Part shown: positions 42,480-60,408 of the stretch, in pieces | How the letters are laid out: the number at the start of each line of letters is the position of its first letter | Numbering within the stretch: the stretch's first letter is position 1 | NCBI GenBank assembly: GCA_965235115.1 | Contig: OZ249445.1 | Location: forward strand, 8,680,001 to 8,744,000 | Direction of reading: 5' to 3' | Origin: Laetmonice hystrix | Taxonomy: Eukaryota | Length of the DNA stretch: 64,000 nt | Translations under genes and position numbers: made by a program | The notes under the pieces: model-generated | Databases searched by the model: none | What the model was told of the DNA's origin: nothing | The model's input: the letters and a program-made list of their open reading frames with translations, nothing else

Positions 42480-42790
42480 CCGGCTGTTCACCTGCGGTTT
42501 TTAAGGCGCGCCATGGCGGTTTGTGTTGCCGTCGCCGGGCGGTTGGCCCGCGGTGAGCCGCCTTGATCGGGATTGACTAAGTAGTCACATGTTAGTATTC
42601 ACTGGTTGACCCTACATTAAAACCAATCGAACGCGCACGTGAGACATGCATGCACGCAAGGTGAGCCACAGCAAGGAGAGTCCCGCCTTGCTGTGGTCTG
42701 ACCCCCCCCCCCCGCCCCCACTCCCTCGCTTGCCGTGCGGTGTAGGCCGGTAAGGGCATGACCCGGGGGCGGGGCATGGCCAACTCCTTA
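42480..42790 (+). promoter_or_regulatory. Candidate promoter and non-coding first exon of the 43444 gene
   Basis: CpG-rich patch with CGCCATGGCG, CCAAT (42623-42627), CACGTG (42636-42641), a GC box (GGGGCGGGGC near 42766-42776), and consensus donors AAG|GTGAGC (42661) and CCG|GTAAGG (42750). Confidence 0.4.
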
Positions 42791-43342
42791 CCTCCGGATT
42801 ATACTGGGCAACCGAATGATCCCATTAATCAATGGTCTAACACATCACTCTGTCCTTGGCAGTGAGGTCAGGTCAAAACACCCGCATCAAAATATTAGAA
42901 ATCTTAAAGATACACAATAATGTTGTATAGTGCCTATAATCGTTGGTATATAAAACTTATGGTTCTACTTTTATAAATGCCTTAATAGTTTCCTGACAAT
43001 GTCCTTGCACCTGTTACTCGTGTTTACAAGCATCGCACATCAAATTTGGTGCAGTAATGTCACAGCCAGCCATCTCAATATAAACCACACTTGTCAAGGA
43101 CAGTGATATGCCATTCTAAAGCTTCATTGGCAGAACAAACTAAGTATATATGACTAGGCTTAAGTTGGTGTCCCTGGGGCACTTGCTGCATCTGTGTAGA
43201 GATGTACTAAGCACAAATGTTGTTAGCCTTGTGAACTTTGAGGTTTGGTATATAGCTAGGGACCCTACCGGTGAAAAGTAACCGACACATCATGTTTATT
43301 CTGGTTTTACTGTCTGCATATTTCCCTTTCTTGTGCTACCTT

Positions 43343-43376
43343 CTCACACGTTGTGTTATTTTTTGTCTTTCTCTAG
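43343..43376 (+). promoter_or_regulatory. 3' splice acceptor (branch point, polypyrimidine tract, TAG) feeding the large coding exon
   Basis: CTCAC branch-like site at 43343-43347, then ttattttttgtctttctctag; the exon would start at 43377. Confidence 0.7.
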
Positions 43377-43443
43377 GTGAGGTGACGGCGTTCACCCTAT
43401 CTGCATACCACGTGCCCCCTGCCCATGCGTGTGAAGTCCTAGC

Positions 43444-46400
43444 ATGCCCGACGTGTTCGAGGCGCCTCTAGCGGCAGCCCCCCTTGACGAAGGCCTGTTG
43501 ACTGTGTCCCCAGCGAGACTCTTGCCGCCCTCGGCCCTCTACCGCCCCCACAGCCGGCAGCGCCGAGCCCTTCTTCCTATGTCGGCCGGGGTCGAGATCA
43601 CGGCCCGTGGAGGCCTCCGTTTGAACCACCATTACCCATCTGACGAACGTCACCATATGCACCATCACCATCACCACCACCTTGATCCCCACAGCCACCA
43701 CCGCCGGCGTCCGGCCGCTGCAGCCGTGCGCTGCCTGGCGGACATTGACCGCACGATGAGGGCTAACGAGAGGTGGGTGCTCCTTAATAAGGAGACCTTC
43801 CAGGAGATCTTTGACGCCACCTTACATGAGATGACCCGCACCCCTGAAGAGCTGCTCGATGAGGCGGGGGACCCCGGCAAAAAACGAGGCCGCTCGCCGG
43901 CCGTCAGCGACACCGCCTCGGACGGTGATAGCAGCAACAACAATAATATCATCAGCAACAACAACAAAACGCACGGTTATCGCCGCAACTGTAGTTCGAG
44001 TGAATGTAGCAGTGGGGCGTACAGTGAACCTGAACAAGACGTCACTCCCTCGTCTGTGACGTCACCAAGCGCGTGCCGGTCGGGTCCGGCTCTAACGGCC
44101 ACAGCGCCGACCGAGTCCGCCAAGTTGACGGTCGCTCTCTCTGACATCACCAATGACGGTCAGGGTCAGCAACGCTATCAGAACGTCGCCGTGACGTCAC
44201 AAACGGCGAGCGGCGACAGCTCCGTACCGTCTCCAGTGTCTGCGTCGCAACAGGTGGGACCTGACCGTGAGAACGAACCATTAGATCTCTCTATGAACCG
44301 CTCCCCTTCGGTGGAGGTGGTGGCCAGTCCGGGCAGTGATCGCGCTGAGACACTGGCCTCTACAAGTAGTAGCAGCTCTACAACCGAAGTCAGCGCTACC
44401 AGCCAAAAACAAGCCATGGCCTGCGTCACATCAGCCACTACTTCAAATGTAATGTCAGTGTCGTCCATGTCTAACGTCATATCGCGCCCCGGTCGGGTTA
44501 GCCCTGGTCGAGCATCTGGTAACGGTGGTAGCGACGAACCCCACCACCAGCGCCACCGGCACCGCCACCACCAGAACCACCACCACCACCACAATACACC
44601 ATCACACAGCAGTGCTGTGCCAATGCCGCTGGCAGCCAGTGGTGCTGGCGGTAGTTCGGGTGCACCGTGCGACCTGAAGGCGGCCAGCCCACGTGGTAGT
44701 GGAAGCAGCGGCGGCAGTGTCTGCCTGGTCGGGCCGTCAGCCAACAAGATACCGGCCCGGCGGGGCTCCCTGCCAGCTGCGGCGGGCGGTGGTGGCAGCA
44801 GCGGTAGTGGCAGGAGCGCCAGCCCCAGAGACCGTCCGACCAGTGAAGTAGCAGCAGCAACATTATCGCCAGCATCACGGGCCATGACCACTTCATCCCC
44901 GCTTCTCTCGTCCCGACCGGCCGCTACGCTCGCCAACATGAAAGCGCGTGGGGAGAACTGGGTGCCGTTTAACAAAGACGCTGTCTACGGCATTGTAGAG
45001 GACGTTATACACCAACTGGAGGATCAGAAAGGATCTGACATCAAGGCACAATCAACGGGAAGGTCCGCAGACACTGTCCTGAAATCAAAGATGCCATCCT
45101 CACCAAACAGTTATAGCAGTGCGCCTAGCAAATCTCATCATAGACTGGATAAGCGTGGCATGAATGATTTTAGTGGGAAACCTTCACGACGGGCAAGTCC
45201 CGTGGACTCTGAGTCGTGCTCAGGTTCAGAGGAGTGTGTGAGCGGAGATGATTCCAATGGATCTAACTCACGCCTTCACAAACCGCGTCCGGCGCGGGGT
45301 CACCCAGGATCATCTATTGGAGTATATGATACGCATGTTGGTAAGCAAAACTCATTGGTGCCAATGTGCAACTTTCATTCTCGACGTGTCAGTGGCGCGA
45401 GCAGTGCAGTGGTAGGTGGGGGGCAGACTAGTCAGGAAGGTGGCATCCCCATTATGGACACAGCAGCGGAAGGTGACCACGCCCTCCCCACTCCTCTCAC
45501 TGACCGCCACTTAGTCTCAGGTGTTATAAGCGCCAGTGGCGCCAGTACCCAGTCAGGTAGCGCCAACAGTAGTCCCACATCCAAGGTCAAGCAGTGCTGG
45601 GTGGCGCTTGATAAAATGTTTGTCTTTGACATTGTCGATTCAGCAATGCGTAAAGCGGACGACACGAAAGGCGATTCTGACGATGGTTCCAGTGACGGGC
45701 GTCACGCTCAGGCCAAGGATCCGGCCGAGTGTGCTCCCAACACCAAGGTAGATAGCAAAGCTAGTGAGACGAGTGCGAGCGGCGCGGGGAAGGGCCCACC
45801 AGGGGGCGCAGTGAAGGAAGGACCTGGGGGCGGCGGCGGGAGGTGTCTGAAAAGACGAAATGAGGGAGCGAATGATAAAGTGTGTGTGTCCAAAAAACGT
45901 CGGGAGGGGGGCGGACAGGACAGCGGCGTCACGTCGCCCCTCCCAGCTCCCACAGCCCCACATAGTCCCAACAATGCCTTGTGCAGCAGCGGACATGGTC
46001 GTACTGTTAACAGTGCCTCCTCACAGTGCCATACAGTGGGAAAAGGTTGCAGTCCCCACCTCAGCTGTCTAGAAGATTTGCTGGCCGAATCAAACAGTCA
46101 AAAGGTGGGCACCAAGACGTGCGGTGACCGTTCCACCCCCCATTCACCGCAAGTCTCGCAGCGTAATTCGCCTGTGGCGAGAGAACTCGGTAACATGCAC
46201 TTGGGTGTCAGCCAAGGGACCGGCATCGATCAAGCCAGCAGCGAAAAAGTTGCCACGGCAAAACAAGAAAATATAAAAGGAGCGCACGCACTGACTCCGG
46301 TTATTAGAACTCTGTGTTCAATGTCTGAAAATAATCAGTGCGCACCGAGTGACACGAAGGAAAGCGATGGTGGCACGCATGCACGAGGCGGCGGGGGAAG

Positions 46401-47118
46401 GCGAGAGGCCGTGGACGTCGGCAATGACGTCGGTAACTCCACTAAACATGGCCTAGTCCCTCTCTCTGCGTCTTCGACTAAAGATGCTCGGAGTAGCCCT
46501 CGACTCGGTTGGATCGCTGTCTCAAAAATTGAGGTCCATAACATATTTGATTCCGTCGTGGACAGCATGATTGCGGATGACGTTGCGGATGACGTTGTGA
46601 CGTCATCGCCGGTACGTAGCGATATCGCCACGGCTCAGTCCCCAGTGCCTTCTTCGTCTGCCTCGACCTCGTCCTCGGCCGGCCGCCAGGGGTCGCCAGC
46701 GTCCTCTCCACTTCCGGCGCGTGACGCCGACTCCTCGACGGCTGCGTCTCCTCCCCCTCCTCCGTCCTCGGCTGGATCCAGCAGTGACAAGCAGCAAACA
46801 GTCGACCGAACCCAAAGTCCCCTCGGGGTCGACAGCCGTGAGAGCGGCGCCCAGTCGCCCCTACCGGCGTCGCCCCAGTCGCCGCGATCTCCAGGCGAGG
46901 CCCACGATCGGAACAGCGATCTGAGGTCGACAAAAGCTTTCAAATGGAAGTCGAGTCTTCTGATGCGCGTCAACGAGGAGAACAAACCCGACGTGGCGCA
47001 ACTTCCGGCTCCCGCCAACACTGCGCATGCGCGGGGAAGTAGTAGCAAACAGAAGAATGACAGTAAAAGTGTAAGGTGTGGTAGAAGGGCAGGAACAACG
47101 AGGAAACATACTAAGTAG
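43444..47118 (+). CDS. Uncharacterised 1,224-aa, largely disordered nuclear protein (putative transcriptional co-regulator scaffold) encoded in one large exon
   Basis: By far the longest ORF in the window (next longest is 265 aa and lies antisense inside it). GC-rich. ATG is preceded by an in-frame TGA at 43432 and a strong acceptor at 43375-43376. Four internal copies of a Trp-anchored 20-aa motif, PLDLS (44278-44292), LEDLL (46069-46083), KKRGR (43879-43893) and bipartite KRR-x11-KKRR (45850-45903). The true 3' end may be spliced at 47071. Confidence 0.85.
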   Translation: MPDVFEAPLAAAPLDEGLLTVSPARLLPPSALYRPHSRQRRALLPMSAGVEITARGGLRLNHHYPSDERHHMHHHHHHHLDPHSHHRRRPAAAAVRCLADIDRTMRANERWVLLNKETFQEIFDATLHEMTRTPEELLDEAGDPGKKRGRSPAVSDTASDGDSSNNNNIISNNNKTHGYRRNCSSSECSSGAYSEPEQDVTPSSVTSPSACRSGPALTATAPTESAKLTVALSDITNDGQGQQRYQNVAVTSQTASGDSSVPSPVSASQQVGPDRENEPLDLSMNRSPSVEVVASPGSDRAETLASTSSSSSTTEVSATSQKQAMACVTSATTSNVMSVSSMSNVISRPGRVSPGRASGNGGSDEPHHQRHRHRHHQNHHHHHNTPSHSSAVPMPLAASGAGGSSGAPCDLKAASPRGSGSSGGSVCLVGPSANKIPARRGSLPAAAGGGGSSGSGRSASPRDRPTSEVAAATLSPASRAMTTSSPLLSSRPAATLANMKARGENWVPFNKDAVYGIVEDVIHQLEDQKGSDIKAQSTGRSADTVLKSKMPSSPNSYSSAPSKSHHRLDKRGMNDFSGKPSRRASPVDSESCSGSEECVSGDDSNGSNSRLHKPRPARGHPGSSIGVYDTHVGKQNSLVPMCNFHSRRVSGASSAVVGGGQTSQEGGIPIMDTAAEGDHALPTPLTDRHLVSGVISASGASTQSGSANSSPTSKVKQCWVALDKMFVFDIVDSAMRKADDTKGDSDDGSSDGRHAQAKDPAECAPNTKVDSKASETSASGAGKGPPGGAVKEGPGGGGGRCLKRRNEGANDKVCVSKKRREGGGQDSGVTSPLPAPTAPHSPNNALCSSGHGRTVNSASSQCHTVGKGCSPHLSCLEDLLAESNSQKVGTKTCGDRSTPHSPQVSQRNSPVARELGNMHLGVSQGTGIDQASSEKVATAKQENIKGAHALTPVIRTLCSMSENNQCAPSDTKESDGGTHARGGGGRREAVDVGNDVGNSTKHGLVPLSASSTKDARSSPRLGWIAVSKIEVHNIFDSVVDSMIADDVADDVVTSSPVRSDIATAQSPVPSSSASTSSSAGRQGSPASSPLPARDADSSTAASPPPPPSSAGSSSDKQQTVDRTQSPLGVDSRESGAQSPLPASPQSPRSPGEAHDRNSDLRSTKAFKWKSSLLMRVNEENKPDVAQLPAPANTAHARGSSSKQKNDSKSVRCGRRAGTTRKHTK

Positions 47119-47363
47119 ACCTTCTTCGTATGGGCTACATAGCATGCGTTATGTGCAGTCTGGACACTTAAGATACCAAATTGGTGCAGTTTAGCATTCT
47201 AATTATAATTGGACACACGCCAGATGCCTTTCACACTGATGTAATCCAGTGCAAAAACAGGGGAAATCGAACTCATCATTACTGGGTTCAAGATGAGGAG
47301 ATAGATACACATCTCTGTACTGTAGCATTTAGCCAAGCGTTGTTTGGATCAGAACCAGGTATA

Positions 47364-47376
47364 CGCCCTCTAGTGG
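47364..47376 (-). promoter_or_regulatory. CTCF-like motif just 3' of the large ORF
   Basis: Minus strand reads CCACTAGAGGGCG. Confidence 0.45.
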
Positions 47377-47817
47377 CAGAAGTGTGTCATCATGACCATG
47401 TTTGAGTTTTAATTATGTAACACACCTGAGCCACGGTACGCTAACATCGCACAGGTAGAGTTTTCGTGAACGTCCAAGACGTCAGTAACTCTATATAAAG
47501 GCTCACATTTCCTTCTCCCGGTAAAAAGACGCCAAAAGATTATTTTTCAAAACTCGCTTTTTCAGGTTGCATATAGGATAGTGGTCCCCCCATCTGAAAC
47601 ATGTAGGGTTGGCAGTGACTAATATATTAAACTGGTGTCGCGAACCAGAGAAAGGTGGTTAGGATGCCCATTCTGTATACAAATGGTGCCACAGGCGGAA
47701 AAGTTATGTCTGTCACCAGAATATTATTGACGAGGAAACATATCGAAAACAGAAGAGGGTGAAACCAGGTGGTCGAGGGTCGACGATGTAGGTGTAAACT
47801 AACTTACGTATCTGTCA

Positions 47818-47874
47818 ATGTGCAAGGACAGTGAAGATGTGCAAGGACAGTGAATATGTGCAAAGACAGTGAAG
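47818..47874. repeat. 19-bp tandem repeat x3
   Basis: ATGTGCAA(G/A)GACAGTGAA(G/T)-type unit three times. Confidence 0.9.
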
Positions 47875-50800
47875 AGGTGGCTTTAGAGGAGCGACTCAGC
47901 GAATAATATGTACGTACATCTGTGTGCATGCGTGCATGTATTCATGCATGCGTGAATGCATGCTTGTATGTATGCATGATGTCAGCCCGGGCGCACACGC
48001 ACACTAACTATAGGTCTACATACAGCTAGTCCTACACAGGTGCAAACATAACGTACAGACAGAGTATCCCATCATATAGACATTTACCTTTTAAAGGGAA
48101 GAAATGTGCAAAGAGTGATGTCATCTAATGAACGTGTGAATATGTGAGAGGTTATTGAGAACTAAGCCGATCTCCAATTTGAGGCGACGTCAGCTGCCAT
48201 AAAATGGCGGGAAACTTAGCGCCTTACAGGCGGGCCGTCACTGGCCGCGCATGTCGATTGGCGCGGGTATGACGTGAACTCAACATTTCCCTTCTCATGA
48301 CGTATACAAGTTCACATGATTTCACCGTACACACACGAGGGTAGTTGGTCATATATTGCAAGGTTCTATTTTTGTAATTGGAGAGAGAATATCAACGTTT
48401 ATCAGCCGTCAGGATTAACGTCTGTCTAACAGACTCCGTGCAGGCGGTCCCGGCATTTACTAGGTCCGGTCCATACATATAGGAGGTTTGGCTGACCGAC
48501 ACTTTTAGGTGTTTATATCATTTAGGTGACGGCTTTCATTCACACTATCGCAGTGTTGTAAATGCCAAACCTTTCCAAGTCGCTGATATCAGTGTTTTTA
48601 ATAATGACACGAAAGATATGATAATAGACACAAAGTTATCATTTCCTAGAATCTATCCAATGTTATTAAAAAATGAAGTGATACGCACCAGAACATCTGT
48701 GCAATTAAGACTATTAATTGTAAAAGCCTCCTTGTTTTCCTCTTTGGTTGTGCCATATGGATTGTTTCAATATTTCAGGTTTTTCTCTGATAAAATTATT
48801 CGGTCATTGTCTGTGTGATACGTATATACGTGTGTGTATATACAAGTGTATATACATGTATATTTGTAAAGTTGACTGTTAGATAGCCGTACCATTGCGT
48901 GACACAAATCTAGCAGTCAGGTTGCAGTGCACTGGTCACTATTGTGAAGGATTTGTATGACTATAGGATATGACCTTGAGGAGACCCCGCGACTCTCCAC
49001 CTTCTCCACCGGTGAGCTCCACATGGTAGATAGTTCTCAGCCGGAAGTCGGACCCAGCCCATGCGTATTGTCCACTTCCGGTTTGTGGATCAGGTGGACC
49101 ATAGAAGCCTTTCAGTGAGAGCTGAACGGAGAGCTGTCGCTTTCAGCATACATTCCTCCAAATGTCCCTCCACAGTCTTTTCATGAGAAGAAAACTTTGT
49201 GAAAACCTATGATATGTGTATATATCATATCAAAACTAGTAGGTACTATTATAATGTATGCCTCTATAAGTAAGGTGTGTGTCAAGAGATGATCTCTTAT
49301 TTCAGTTCCACGATGTATCCTAAAACATTTAACAGAAACTATACCAGGTCTTGCCTTTACAATCGCAACGTCAGGTGCACAATACTCTTCGTAGTGTTTA
49401 CACTGAATACTCGGTATATCTTGGTGTTACCATTTTAGGGTTTGTAACCATCCCAACATCTGTGATAGAGAAAGCCACTCTGTAGATGTATACCGATGTT
49501 AAAATCCTCTTAAAAGACCAGAAGCCAGAAATGAGTTTTACCTTTTTCTACTAATCGAATTCCTAGATCCTACCCGTTAGGGTTTTTCTAGTAGTCAGAC
49601 ATCGGCAGCGTAGATCTATACATAGAAATCATTGGTGCATATATAAGGGCTTATAAAGACCAAAAATATCATACATATGGCTGGCTGTCCAACTGAAATT
49701 ATAAGACTATTATGTGATGTAGTTAGATTATGGTGAATTTAAGCAAAGAGTGGGTTTCCTTCAGTCAACAGACACTGAATGTGTCACCGTTCCACACGCC
49801 TACTTTCTCCAGGATTAGTCAGATTTCAGAACCGATTTGGATCATGTACATGTACCTGAAGACTTCTTGACCGTTTAGAGGAAGTGGACTTCATACATGT
49901 ACGCCCCGTTTCAATATGGCAAGGTTAAGTCCCTGTAGCAGACAGTCAGTCCCCCAAGCGGCCTTCCGGTGCGTGTGTCCCGAATAATAGCCGTATCGGA
50001 GGAATAATGTGGAGGAGGTACGGCTGACATAACCAGCACTGCCCGCCCGGCAAAATATACCCTCCACATTGACGCCGAGGCGCATGCTGGGGGCCCGTCT
50101 GGGACGGCGAGACGGACTGGCCTTGCACAAATAACATGGTCCACCCCTACGGTGCAACATCCGTGCCAACTGAGCAAAAAACTAACAGATAACTTATCTA
50201 ACTTCAAACACATTCAGCTCAGACTGTGAGAATCAGCCGCCGCACAGGGGAAGCCACCAACTTCAATTTTTATCCATGCTGCCTTGCAAGTGAGTTTAAC
50301 TCATTATAATGGAACAAAAGAAAAAGAACTCGGGATGTGATAGTGAGAAGGGGGTGCAACCATATTTCAAACAATATAATTGTGAGATCTATTTAAGGCT
50401 TCCTCTTTGGGATGCTTATTTTGTCAGATGACAGAACATTGGTTCCTATGCTCTCCTCCTGTACTTAACTGTTTGGCAGACCTGGCAGATGTGTGTCGCT
50501 ATTTTAAACTAATTGTTACCACAAAATGAATACACGTGCTCGATATAAAACAACTTTGTAATGCATTTCCCTAATAATGTACGACTGCTAAGTGTTCTAC
50601 ACTCTAATGATCGTTACAAAGCCGCATAATTATGGTTGCCGTTTATGATGAATACGTCGAGCATGTTATTGTTATCACTGTCGTGCGTGTCAATCTGTGG
50701 GCATGCGCACCAATGATATGCGTCTTGTATAGTATACAAGTATTTTCTGGTGTTGATCTATATACAATTGCAGCCACAGATGGAACTCTTAGTAGCGTCC

Positions 50801-60274: not shown

Positions 60275-60408
60275 NNNNNNNNNNNNNNNNNNNNNNNNNN
60301 NNNNNNNNNNNNNNNNNNNNNNNNNNNNNNNNNNNNNNNNNNNNNNNNNNNNNNNNNNNNNNNNNNNNNNNNNNNNNNNNNNNNNNNNNNNNNNNNNNNN
60401 NNNNNNNN
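60275..60408. other. Assembly gap (134 N)
   Basis: Run of N. Confidence 1.

What the first reader, a model, noticed from the sequence alone, without database searches (positions are those of the whole stretch)
43774..46569. Four copies of an unrecognised Trp-anchored 20-aa helical motif spaced through a 1,224-aa disordered protein
Seen: WVLLNKETFQEIFDATLHEM (43774-43833, W at aa111), WVPFNKDAVYGIVEDVIHQL (44959-45018, aa506), WVALDKMFVFDIVDSAMRKA (45598-45657, aa719) and WIAVSKIEVHNIFDSVVDSM (46510-46569, aa1023). W1, K6 and I12 are invariant, position 14 is D/E, and hydrophobic residues recur at positions 2, 4, 9, 13 and 17. The protein has only five Trp, and four are these anchors. Copies 1 and 2 are preceded by M[RK]A..E, and copies 3 and 4 by SSP, suggesting two duplication pairs. 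The DNA has diverged while the residue pattern is kept, which points to selection on the peptide. Knowledge: the hydrophobic-xx-hydrophobic-hydrophobic-xxx-hydrophobic pattern is the amphipathic-helix pattern of nuclear-receptor CoRNR boxes and of helices that dock on RII/DPY30 D/D domains. Inference: a multivalent docking module, separated by 200-400 aa linkers, for an unknown partner.
Basis: partly seen in the sequence, partly recalled or inferred. Interest (0 to 1): 0.78.

Follow-up and report, generated by a model that had tools for sequence, protein, structure and literature searches.

The report
Repeated docking helix in worm protein
A marine worm gene encodes a long, mostly floppy protein whose few conserved parts include four versions of a short tryptophan-capped helix not described before; these are most likely docking sites linking partner proteins to a gene-silencing factor.

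Summary
ORF 43444-47118 (+) encodes 1,224 aa. The four 20-aa motifs sit at aa 111, 506, 719 and 1023, and four of the five Trp are their anchors.

The motifs are not chance. A profile built from them finds 23 proteins among 1.84 billion representatives, most carrying 3-4 copies in the same order. The only named one is a Ridgeia piscesae (annelid) hypothetical protein. Pfam, PDB sequences and the worm's own genome hold nothing else like it.

Across orthologues only seven islands are conserved:
- the four motifs;
- ALSDITND;
- ENEPLDLS, a CtBP-type PxDLS motif;
- a C-terminal KAFKWKSSLLMRV box.

AlphaFold2 predicts disorder everywhere except isolated helices that start exactly at Lys6 of each copy, plus a helix in the C-terminal box.

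Each copy keeps its own orthologous identity, so this is not simple equal-copy multivalency. The suggested "two duplication pairs" is not supported.

Best reading: an uncharacterised, single-exon, nuclear CtBP-recruiting scaffold with four docking helices. The partner is unknown. A co-fold of copy 1 with a nuclear-receptor ligand-binding domain from the same genome gave weak support only (0.60; best control 0.03). No RNA data were available.

First readers noted this same stretch twice; one read it as RIP140-like.

The parts
43444..47118 (+). Complete single-exon coding sequence, 1,224 aa plus stop. The start ATG lies 3 codons after an in-frame stop, and the 'MP[DV]' start is shared by most family members.
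   Evidence: N-termini
43774..43833 (+). Motif copy 1, WVLLNKETFQEIFDATLHEM (aa 111-130). The helix is predicted from K116 to M130.
   Evidence: AF2 pLDDT 73-88
44959..45018 (+). Motif copy 2, WVPFNKDAVYGIVEDVIHQL (aa 506-525). The helix is predicted at aa 511-529.
   Evidence: AF2 pLDDT 73-76
45598..45657 (+). Motif copy 3, WVALDKMFVFDIVDSAMRKA (aa 719-738), preceded by a conserved KQC. The helix is predicted at aa 724-740.
   Evidence: AF2 pLDDT 73-86 with the 20-sequence alignment
46510..46569 (+). Motif copy 4, WIAVSKIEVHNIFDSVVDSM (aa 1023-1042), preceded by an invariant DARSSPRLG. The helix is predicted at aa 1028-1051.
   Evidence: AF2 pLDDT 79-86
44134..44157 (+). Conserved island ALSDITND (aa 231-238). 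It is present only in the nearer orthologues; function unknown.
44269..44292 (+). Conserved island ENEPLDLS (aa 276-283), a PxDLS-type CtBP-binding motif.
   Evidence: Invariant E-N-E-P-L-D-L in 7 orthologues. A P[LIVM][DN]L[ST] match is present in 16 of 27 family proteins (two more carry VLDLS), against 1.7% of shuffles.
45850..45903 (+). Bipartite-NLS-like basic cluster KRRNEGANDKVCVSKKRR (aa 803-820).
   Evidence: basic clusters at the equivalent place in orthologues (consensus)
46069..46083 (+). Single LxxLL box, LEDLL (aa 876-880), kept only in the two nearest orthologues.
46933..46980 (+). C-terminal box KAFKWKSSLLMRVNEE (aa 1164-1179). It holds the fifth Trp, is conserved family-wide, and has a predicted short helix at aa 1168-1179.
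   Evidence: AF2 pLDDT 69-75
43642..43701 (+). His-rich tract 1 (aa 67-86).
44533..44592 (+). His-rich tract 2 (aa 364-383). Public contigs break here.

Best explanation
The ORF is a real, single-exon gene of an uncharacterised protein family known so far from annelids. It encodes an intrinsically disordered, probably nuclear scaffold.

Its functional parts are short conserved islands. The four Trp-anchored motifs are non-equivalent docking helices. Each has an extended W-hydrophobic-x-hydrophobic-[S/N] cap followed by a 15-24-residue amphipathic helix that starts at the near-invariant Lys6. Basic residues are enriched before it and acidic residues after it. The helices are expected to fold onto hydrophobic grooves of one or more partner proteins.

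The conserved PLDLS motif recruits the co-repressor CtBP, so the protein would bridge its partner(s) to CtBP in the manner of RIP140/LCoR-type co-repressors.

Shown: the motifs, their family-wide conservation and order, the helix and disorder prediction, the conservation of PxDLS, and purifying selection. Inferred: nuclear location, CtBP binding, the docking function and the partner.

The best named partner candidate is the co-regulator groove of a nuclear-receptor ligand-binding domain. I put that sub-claim at about 0.2.
For: - Motif reality and statistics.
- Family: the motif profile finds 23 proteins with E<=1e-3 (16 with E<=1e-10) among 1.84 billion representatives. Most have 3-4 matched stretches in the same order, plus the FKWK box.
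- Own genome: only these four sites match the profile (E 1e-10 to 1e-13; next best E>5).
- Conservation: seven islands only; motifs 0.58-0.80 against 0.28 for the rest.
- Family logo from 85 instances: W 78, K6 84, S/N5 80. K/R make up 22.6% of the 8 upstream residues and D/E 24.5% of the 12 downstream residues, against 12% overall.
- Selection: across the 80 motif codons compared with four orthologues, 28-33 differ only synonymously, third-position identity is 0.33-0.44, and 52-62 residues are kept. Of 7 allelic SNPs in the CDS, 6 are synonymous.
- Structure: AF2 gives mean pLDDT 37 and 51, with isolated helices starting at K6 of every copy (pLDDT 73-88) and no strands or packing.
- CtBP link: ENEPLDLS is invariant in 7 orthologues. 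A P[LIVM][DN]L[ST] match is present in 16 of 27 family proteins at drifting positions, against 1.7% of shuffles.
- NLS-like cluster.
- Language-model neighbours are NRIP1 (0.82), LCoRL (0.77) and E1A, all CtBP-binding co-regulators; these are weak leads only.
- Co-fold of copy 1 (aa 98-140) with a single-exon NR LBD of the same genome: ipSAE 0.60 (runs 0.65/0.60/0.40), best of 3 controls 0.03, partner pLDDT at least 59, runs agreeing in at least 37% of contacts. The tool's verdict was 'weak support'. Its mark was reached by 51 of 78 solved complexes and 2 of 108 mismatched pairs, but only 5 of those 78 solved complexes scored 0.60 or under, as did all 4 mismatches that passed (of 180).
Against: - No RNA evidence. 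The three public runs that hold the stretch are DNA.
- No partner is identified.
- The co-fold pass is weak. Peptides are outside the test's calibration, NR-peptide complexes are abundant among solved structures (so the pass may be memory), and the receptor was chosen for convenience.
- The strict CoRNR consensus fits 0 of 85 instances, and only one poorly conserved LxxLL is present.
- PxDLS is a 5-residue motif and is missing from several family members, some of them truncated gene calls.
- Nuclear location rests only on basic clusters.
- There is no sequence homology to NRIP1 or any Pfam family.
Confidence: 0.55

Rival explanations
1. Activation-domain-type motifs. The four helices, with their acidic tails, are generic hydrophobic-xx-hydrophobic-hydrophobic transactivation-like motifs. 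They bind co-activator domains (CBP/p300 KIX/TAZ, Mediator) or other helix-binding modules such as Sin3 PAH. The protein would then be an E1A-like hub that touches both co-activators and CtBP.
For: The hydrophobic-xx-hydrophobic-hydrophobic core is followed by an acidic stretch (D/E 24.5% against 12%). The helices are isolated in a disordered chain. Adenovirus E1A is among the language-model neighbours.
Against: W1, S/N5 and K6 are near-invariant, each copy has strictly conserved own residues, and basic residues are enriched upstream. That is more specific than fuzzy acidic activators usually are.
Confidence: 0.1
2. TEAD-type docking. The short extended segment (W-hydrophobic-x-hydrophobic) followed by a helix with hydrophobic-xx-hydrophobic-hydrophobic-xx-hydrophobic-hydrophobic mimics the strand-plus-helix interface of YAP/Yorkie (LxxLF helix) and Vestigial/Vgll (VxxHF helix) on TEAD/Scalloped. 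The protein would be a multi-site TEAD co-repressor that brings in CtBP.
For: From my own knowledge of the YAP-TEAD and Vgll-TEAD structures: strand, short turn, then a helix with the same hydrophobic register. Copy 4 (VHNIFDSVV) resembles the helix motifs of Yorkie and Vgll. AF2 shows the helix starting one residue after the hydrophobic cap.
Against: No Pfam Vg_Tdu hit. The cap lies about 3 residues closer to the helix core than in YAP or Vgll, and there is no omega-loop.
Confidence: 0.07
3. Self-assembly. The four amphipathic helices, perhaps with the FKWK helix, pack on each other within one chain or between chains. They would form a helical bundle that compacts or oligomerises the scaffold, so they are not partner-docking sites.
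For: There are four non-equivalent copies, each with its own conserved identity and fixed order, as expected for elements with fixed places in one assembly.
Against: Two AF2 runs (7 and 20 sequences) give isolated helices, no packing, and pTM 0.25-0.31. The linkers are 190-380 aa and unconserved. The alignments are shallow, so this is not excluded.
Confidence: 0.07
4. AKAP-like helices. The motifs dock on the dimerisation/docking domain of PKA regulatory subunits or of DPY30-type proteins.
For: The hydrophobic register is i, i+3, i+4, i+7, i+8, i+11, and copy 2 (VYGIVEDVIHQL) fits the published RII-binding consensus. The genome encodes RII and RI subunits.
Against: Only 11 of 85 family instances fit the RII consensus. 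Aromatic and Met residues are frequent at core positions. The PxDLS motif and NLS-like cluster point to a nuclear co-repressor context. Not co-folded.
Confidence: 0.05
5. Extended LIR motifs. W-x-x-[LIV] followed by a helix binds ATG8/GABARAP, as in the giant-ankyrin type of LIR.
For: The core [WFY]xx[LIV] is present in 77 of 85 instances, and a helix follows directly.
Against: The residues upstream are basic, not acidic (K/R 22.6%, D/E 9.7%), and Lys6 is near-invariant right after the core. Both are atypical for LIRs. Not tested by co-fold.
Confidence: 0.03

Closest known systems
RIP140 / NRIP1 (vertebrate ligand-dependent nuclear-receptor co-repressor)
   Same: About 1,200 aa and mostly disordered. 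The whole coding sequence is in one exon. Short helical docking motifs are scattered along the chain, with PxDLS-type CtBP motif(s) and basic NLS-like clusters. It is the nearest language-model neighbour (0.82, weak).
   Different: No sequence homology: none of the four Pfam NRIP1 repression-domain models hits. There is one weakly conserved LxxLL rather than nine (number from my own knowledge). The repeated motif is a Trp-capped 20-mer with beta-branched and aromatic core residues, not LxxLL.
CoRNR boxes of N-CoR / SMRT
   Same: A helix of three or more turns with a hydrophobic-xx-hydrophobic-hydrophobic-xxx-hydrophobic face (75 of 85 instances). It sits in a disordered co-repressor. Weak co-fold pass on an NR LBD.
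   Different: The strict consensus [LI]xx[IV]Ixxx[LIF] fits 0 of 85. The invariant Trp cap, S/N5-K6 and acidic position 14 have no counterpart. There are no SANT or deacetylase-activating domains.
LCoR / LCoRL and adenovirus E1A (CtBP-binding hubs)
   Same: PLDL[ST] motif in a disordered regulator; both are language-model neighbours (0.75-0.77).
   Different: No HTH-psq domain, no DUF4553, no E1A conserved regions, and no Pfam hit at all.
AKAP amphipathic helices (RII / DPY30 D/D docking)
   Same: Same heptad-like hydrophobic register. Copy 2 fits the RII consensus.
   Different: The consensus fits only 11 of 85 instances. The Trp cap and Lys6 are not AKAP features.
YAP/Yorkie and Vestigial (Tondu) TEAD-binding motifs
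   Same: An extended hydrophobic segment, a short turn, then a helix with a hydrophobic-xx-hydrophobic-F/V core. Vgll4/Tgi also carries the motif more than once (own knowledge).
   Different: No Vg_Tdu Pfam hit, different spacing, and no omega-loop. Untested.

Membership tests
Any described protein family (Pfam-A, PDB sequences) | Significant profile or sequence match | tested here: not met
   Pfam: no hit above noise for the window protein at E<=10, nor for 10 family members at E<=0.1. PDB: only His-tag noise with the protein, and 0 hits with the motif profile at E<=10.
NRIP1 / RIP140 | Homology to the NRIP1 repression domains (PF15687-PF15690) | tested here: not met
   No hit at E<=10.
NRIP1 / RIP140 | Multiple LxxLL nuclear-receptor boxes | tested here: not met
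   One LEDLL at aa 876. An equivalent LE[DG]LL is kept only in P0001 and P0002.
NRIP1 / RIP140 | PxDLS CtBP-binding motif(s) and a single coding exon | tested here: met
   ENEPLDLS is invariant in 7 orthologues. A P[LIVM][DN]L[ST] match is present in 16 of 27 family proteins. The ORF is uninterrupted with a conserved MP[DV] start.
NRIP1 / RIP140 | Binds nuclear-receptor ligand-binding domains | tested here: inconclusive
   Co-fold of copy 1 with an own-genome LBD: 0.60 against a best control of 0.03, verdict 'weak support'. Peptides are uncalibrated and memory of solved complexes is possible.
CoRNR box (N-CoR/SMRT) | Consensus [LI]xx[IV]Ixxx[LIF] | tested here: not met
   0 of 85 instances strict; 75 of 85 fit only the relaxed hydrophobic pattern.
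AKAP (RII-binding helix) | [AVLISE]xx[AVLIF][AVLI]xx[AVLI][AVLIF]xx[AVLISE] | tested here: not met
   11 of 85 instances; in the window only copy 2.
AKAP (RII-binding helix) | Docks on the RII/RI D/D dimer | not tested
Vestigial/Tondu or YAP TEAD-binding motif | Vg_Tdu profile match; binding to the TEAD YAP-binding domain | tested here: not met
   No Vg_Tdu hit in Pfam. Binding was not testable here.
LIR / AIM (ATG8-interacting motif) | [WFY]xx[LIV] core with acidic residues upstream | tested here: inconclusive
   The core is present in 77 of 85 instances, but the 8 upstream residues are basic-rich (K/R 22.6%, D/E 9.7%) and K6 follows the core.

The most novel reading that the evidence does not exclude
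The family is a functional counterpart of RIP140/LCoR that arose independently in annelids, and perhaps more widely in lophotrochozoans. It would be a CtBP-recruiting nuclear-receptor co-repressor whose receptor-binding elements are a new class of NR box: a Trp-capped, CoRNR-like 20-mer. The four differentiated copies might each prefer different receptors.
Probability: 0.2. Interest if true: 0.65.

Novelty: new variant of a known kind. Interest (0 to 1): 0.5.

Why it matters
The finding defines a previously undescribed protein family and a new, sharply defined short helical motif: W-hydrophobic-x-hydrophobic-[SN]-K-xx-hydrophobic-xx-[IL]-hydrophobic-[DE]-x-hydrophobic-hydrophobic-xx-M. The family keeps four ordered, individually conserved copies of it in an otherwise fast-evolving disordered chain.

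It is a clean natural example of function residing only in short islands. About 10% of the residues carry nearly all the conservation.

If the CtBP link and a transcription-factor partner are confirmed, annelids would have their own RIP140/LCoR-like co-repressor with a new docking motif. That would be useful for work on nuclear-receptor or TEAD signalling in lophotrochozoans and for motif catalogues such as ELM.

It is not a discovery of a new kind of mechanism, and the partner remains unknown.

Tried and rejected
- Word-indexed homologue searches. The first gave six orthologues. The profile search and a search restricted to the copy-4 region added nothing new, because low-complexity words swamp the candidate list.
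- Cluster look-ups. The only informative name found was the Ridgeia piscesae hypothetical protein KAK2192728.1. The taxa of most hits stay unknown, since they come from unlabelled assemblies or metagenomes with prokaryote-style gene calls. Paper searches for the assembly accessions found nothing.
- RNA evidence. The three runs that hold the stretch are DNA: contigs up to 160 kb cover the flanks evenly. Expression is therefore untested.
- DNA of the nearest orthologue P0001 could not be fetched, so there is no whole-gene dN/dS. Two near-identical copies of P0025 differ at only 5 codons, all non-synonymous and in linkers, which is uninformative.
- Intramolecular sheet or bundle of the four strand+helix units: not seen in two AF2 runs.
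- ESM Atlas searches with the motif regions alone gave no usable hit.
- Literature search for invertebrate RIP140 orthologues found nothing relevant.
- 'Two duplication pairs': rejected on core similarity and on non-conserved flanks.
- AKAP and strict CoRNR consensus membership: rejected by counts.
- The antisense ORFs at 44178-44975 and 46478-46933 overlap the long conserved sense ORF within this G+C-rich, low-complexity stretch. I take them to be by-products, but I did not test them.


Full report
**1. Observation**

The window holds one outstanding ORF, 43444..47118 on the + strand. It is 1,224 aa and is the only ORF above 265 aa in 64 kb. An in-frame stop lies three codons before its ATG.

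The protein has five Trp in all; the fifth is at aa 1168.

The protein is rich in Ser, Ala, Gly and Pro. The pattern W[VI]x3Kx5Ix[DE] occurs four times. In 20,000 shuffles of the protein, a single occurrence appeared only once.

Between copies the DNA is 27-35 of 60 nt identical, and third positions agree at 6-11 of 20. The peptides score 30-38 in BLOSUM62, which puts them in the top ~0.1% of random 20-mer pairs from the same protein. The only stronger internal similarities are two His-rich tracts and Ser/Pro-rich low complexity.

**2. The motif belongs to a family, not to one gene**

A first homologue search gave six proteins of 1,074-1,370 aa, and all of them keep the copies.

I aligned 27 motif instances of 32 aa each (alignment A2) and searched 1.84 billion representative proteins exhaustively. 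This found 23 proteins at E<=1e-3, of which 16 were at E<=1e-10, and most had three or four matched stretches.

Reading those sequences shows one architecture:
- copy 1: NERW-LxK-TFQEIF-ATL-MT;
- usually a PxDLS motif;
- copy 2: NW...[NS]K.T.Y.LVEE;
- copy 3: KQCWVALNK.VVFD[IM]VE.A;
- copy 4: SP[RK]LGW[VI]AVSK..VH.I[VF]DSV;
- a C-terminal box: [AG]FKWKS.LL.R..EE.

Many members also start with MP[DV]. This supports the ATG at 43444 as the true start and the single-exon structure. Most hits were called as uninterrupted ORFs by prokaryote-style gene callers on assemblies and metagenomes.

The only informative name found is 'hypothetical protein NP493_24g07002' of the siboglinid annelid Ridgeia piscesae. 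Earlier notes of this scan describe the window's genome as that of a marine worm.

In the window's own 627-Mb genome the profile finds only these four sites (E 1e-10 to 1e-13; next best E>5). There is therefore no paralogue.

Neither the window protein nor ten family members match Pfam. PDB sequences give nothing either with the protein or with the motif profile.

**3. Selection**

In a seven-orthologue alignment, conservation is confined to seven islands:
- the four motifs (mean pair identity 0.58-0.80);
- ALSDITND;
- ENEPLDLS;
- KAFKWKSSLLMRV.

The rest averages 0.28.

I compared the 80 motif codons with four orthologues whose DNA I could fetch. Between 28 and 33 codons differ only synonymously, and third-position identity is 0.33-0.44, which is near saturation. 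Yet 52-62 of the 80 residues are unchanged.

Three public DNA runs of one sample show seven allelic differences in the CDS. Six are synonymous and one is S1209N; none lies in a motif.

**4. Anatomy of the motif**

The family logo comes from 85 instances in 27 proteins:

| Position | Residues (count of 85) |
|---|---|
| 1 | W 78, Y 6 |
| 2 | V/I/A |
| 4 | L/V |
| 5 | S 41, N 39 |
| 6 | K 84 |
| 9 | V/F |
| 12 | I 54, L 24 |
| 13 | V/F |
| 14 | D 43, E 28, N 12 |
| 16-17 | hydrophobic |
| 20 | M 47 |

Basic residues are enriched in the 8 upstream residues (22.6%) and acidic residues in the 12 downstream residues (24.5%), against about 12% overall.

I ran AlphaFold2 on aa 100-1224 with 7 sequences, and on aa 704-1224 with 20 family sequences. 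It predicts disorder almost everywhere (mean pLDDT 37 and 51). The exceptions are isolated helices:

| Element | Helix (aa) | pLDDT |
|---|---|---|
| copy 1 | 116-130 | 73-88 |
| copy 2 | 511-529 | 73-76 |
| copy 3 | 724-740 | 73-86 |
| copy 4 | 1028-1051 | 79-86 |
| C-terminal box | 1168-1179 | 69-75 |

Each motif helix begins exactly at Lys6. There are no strands and no packing between the helices.

The motif is therefore a non-helical W-hydrophobic-x-hydrophobic-[S/N] cap followed by an amphipathic helix. This is the classic picture of an element that folds on binding.

Each copy has its own conserved residues and flanks across the family: R, N, C or G at -1; KQC before copy 3; DARSSPRLG before copy 4. 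The four are thus distinct, ordered sites and not interchangeable repeats.

The proposed 1+2 / 3+4 duplication pairs are not supported by core similarity (1-2 = 38, 1-4 = 37, 3-4 = 37). The 'SSP' before copy 3 is not conserved.

**5. Context**

ENEPLDLS is invariant in the seven orthologues. A match to P[LIVM][DN]L[ST] occurs in 16 of 27 family proteins at drifting positions, and two more carry VLDLS. Only 1.7% of shuffles of this protein have such a match.

From established knowledge, PxDLS is the CtBP-binding motif of E1A, RIP140, LCoR, ZEB and others.

A bipartite-NLS-like cluster, KRR-x12-KKRR, lies at aa 803-820.

A protein-language-model search lists NRIP1 (0.82), LCoRL (0.77), NEXMIF and adenovirus E1A as nearest clusters. 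All scores are below the level the tool calls reliable, so these are leads only.

Another first-reader note on the same stretch (s1-317270) proposed a RIP140-like architecture. I tested that reading:
- Single exon and CtBP motif: met.
- NRIP1 Pfam domains: not met.
- Multiple LxxLL boxes: not met. There is one LEDLL, kept only in the two nearest orthologues.

So the resemblance is one of organisation, not of descent.

**6. Partner**

The helix face (positions 9, 12, 13, 16, 17, 20) fits many helix-in-groove systems. Counts on the 85 instances:

| Pattern | Instances |
|---|---|
| relaxed CoRNR-like | 75 |
| strict CoRNR | 0 |
| RII-binding AKAP consensus | 11 |
| LIR core | 77 |

The LIR core comes with basic rather than acidic upstream residues.

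The genome offers testable partners that each lie in a single exon: PKA RII and RI docking domains and three complete nuclear-receptor LBDs. With one complex job available, I chose the candidate with the best prior. I co-folded the LBD of locus L022 (aa 50-292 of its open frame) with copy 1 (aa 98-140).

Result:
- ipSAE 0.60 (runs 0.65, 0.60, 0.40), against a best control of 0.03.
- Partner pLDDT at least 59, and runs agreeing in at least 37% of contacts.
- Verdict: 'weak support'.
- The mark was reached by 51 of 78 solved complexes and 2 of 108 mismatched pairs. At 0.60 or under it was reached by only 5 of those 78 solved complexes and by all 4 mismatches that passed (of 180).

Peptides are outside the tool's calibration, and NR-peptide complexes are common among solved structures, so the pass may reflect likeness only. 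I raise the nuclear-receptor reading to about 0.2 and no further.

From memory, the strand-turn-helix layout and the 'IFDSVV' core also recall the TEAD-binding helices of YAP/Yorkie and Vgll. That remains an untested lead.

**7. Verdict**

The most likely function is a disordered nuclear scaffold whose four differentiated docking helices tie one or more partners to CtBP. That is a known kind of system (RIP140, LCoR, E1A) in a new, unrelated form.

Expression, localisation, CtBP binding and the partner are all still inferred.

Noticed in passing
window 43642-43701 and 44533-44592: Two His-rich tracts (aa 67-86 and 364-383) are the strongest internal similarity in the protein. The second tract has a counterpart in the nearest orthologue (P0001); P0001 begins downstream of where the first would lie. 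Public contigs of the same sample break or mis-join at 43660-43680 and 44565-44594, so the tract length may be polymorphic or hard to assemble.
   Followed up: partly
window 46933-46980: The C-terminal box K-A-F-K-W-K-S-S-L-L-M-R-V-N-E-E holds the fifth Trp. It is as conserved family-wide as the four motifs and is predicted as a short helix.
   Followed up: partly
L020:1480-2574 (G000:C1, near 8464634): A complete PKA type-II regulatory subunit (364 aa) lies in one uninterrupted ORF. It has the D/D domain, an RRHSV inhibitor site, and C-terminal sequence that looks like two cyclic-nucleotide-binding domains (read by eye, not scanned). It may be an intronless or retro-copied gene. A second RII first exon lies at L016.
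   Followed up: no
L022, L023, L026 (G000:C5 near 6018329 and 6284238; C19 near 616109): Three nuclear-receptor ligand-binding domains are each encoded whole in a single exon and end in a similar AF-2 helix (PLMQEVLDL, PLIIEIFDL, PIMLEILDL). Two of them lie about 270 kb apart on one contig, which suggests a lineage-specific receptor expansion.
   Followed up: no
window 26129-26325 and 60275-60408: Two runs of N (197 and 134 bases).
   Followed up: no
window 42541-47953: Public DNA contigs of one sample differ from the window at 19 single-base places plus a few small insertions and deletions across 6 kb. Inside the CDS, 6 of 7 differences are synonymous.
   Followed up: yes
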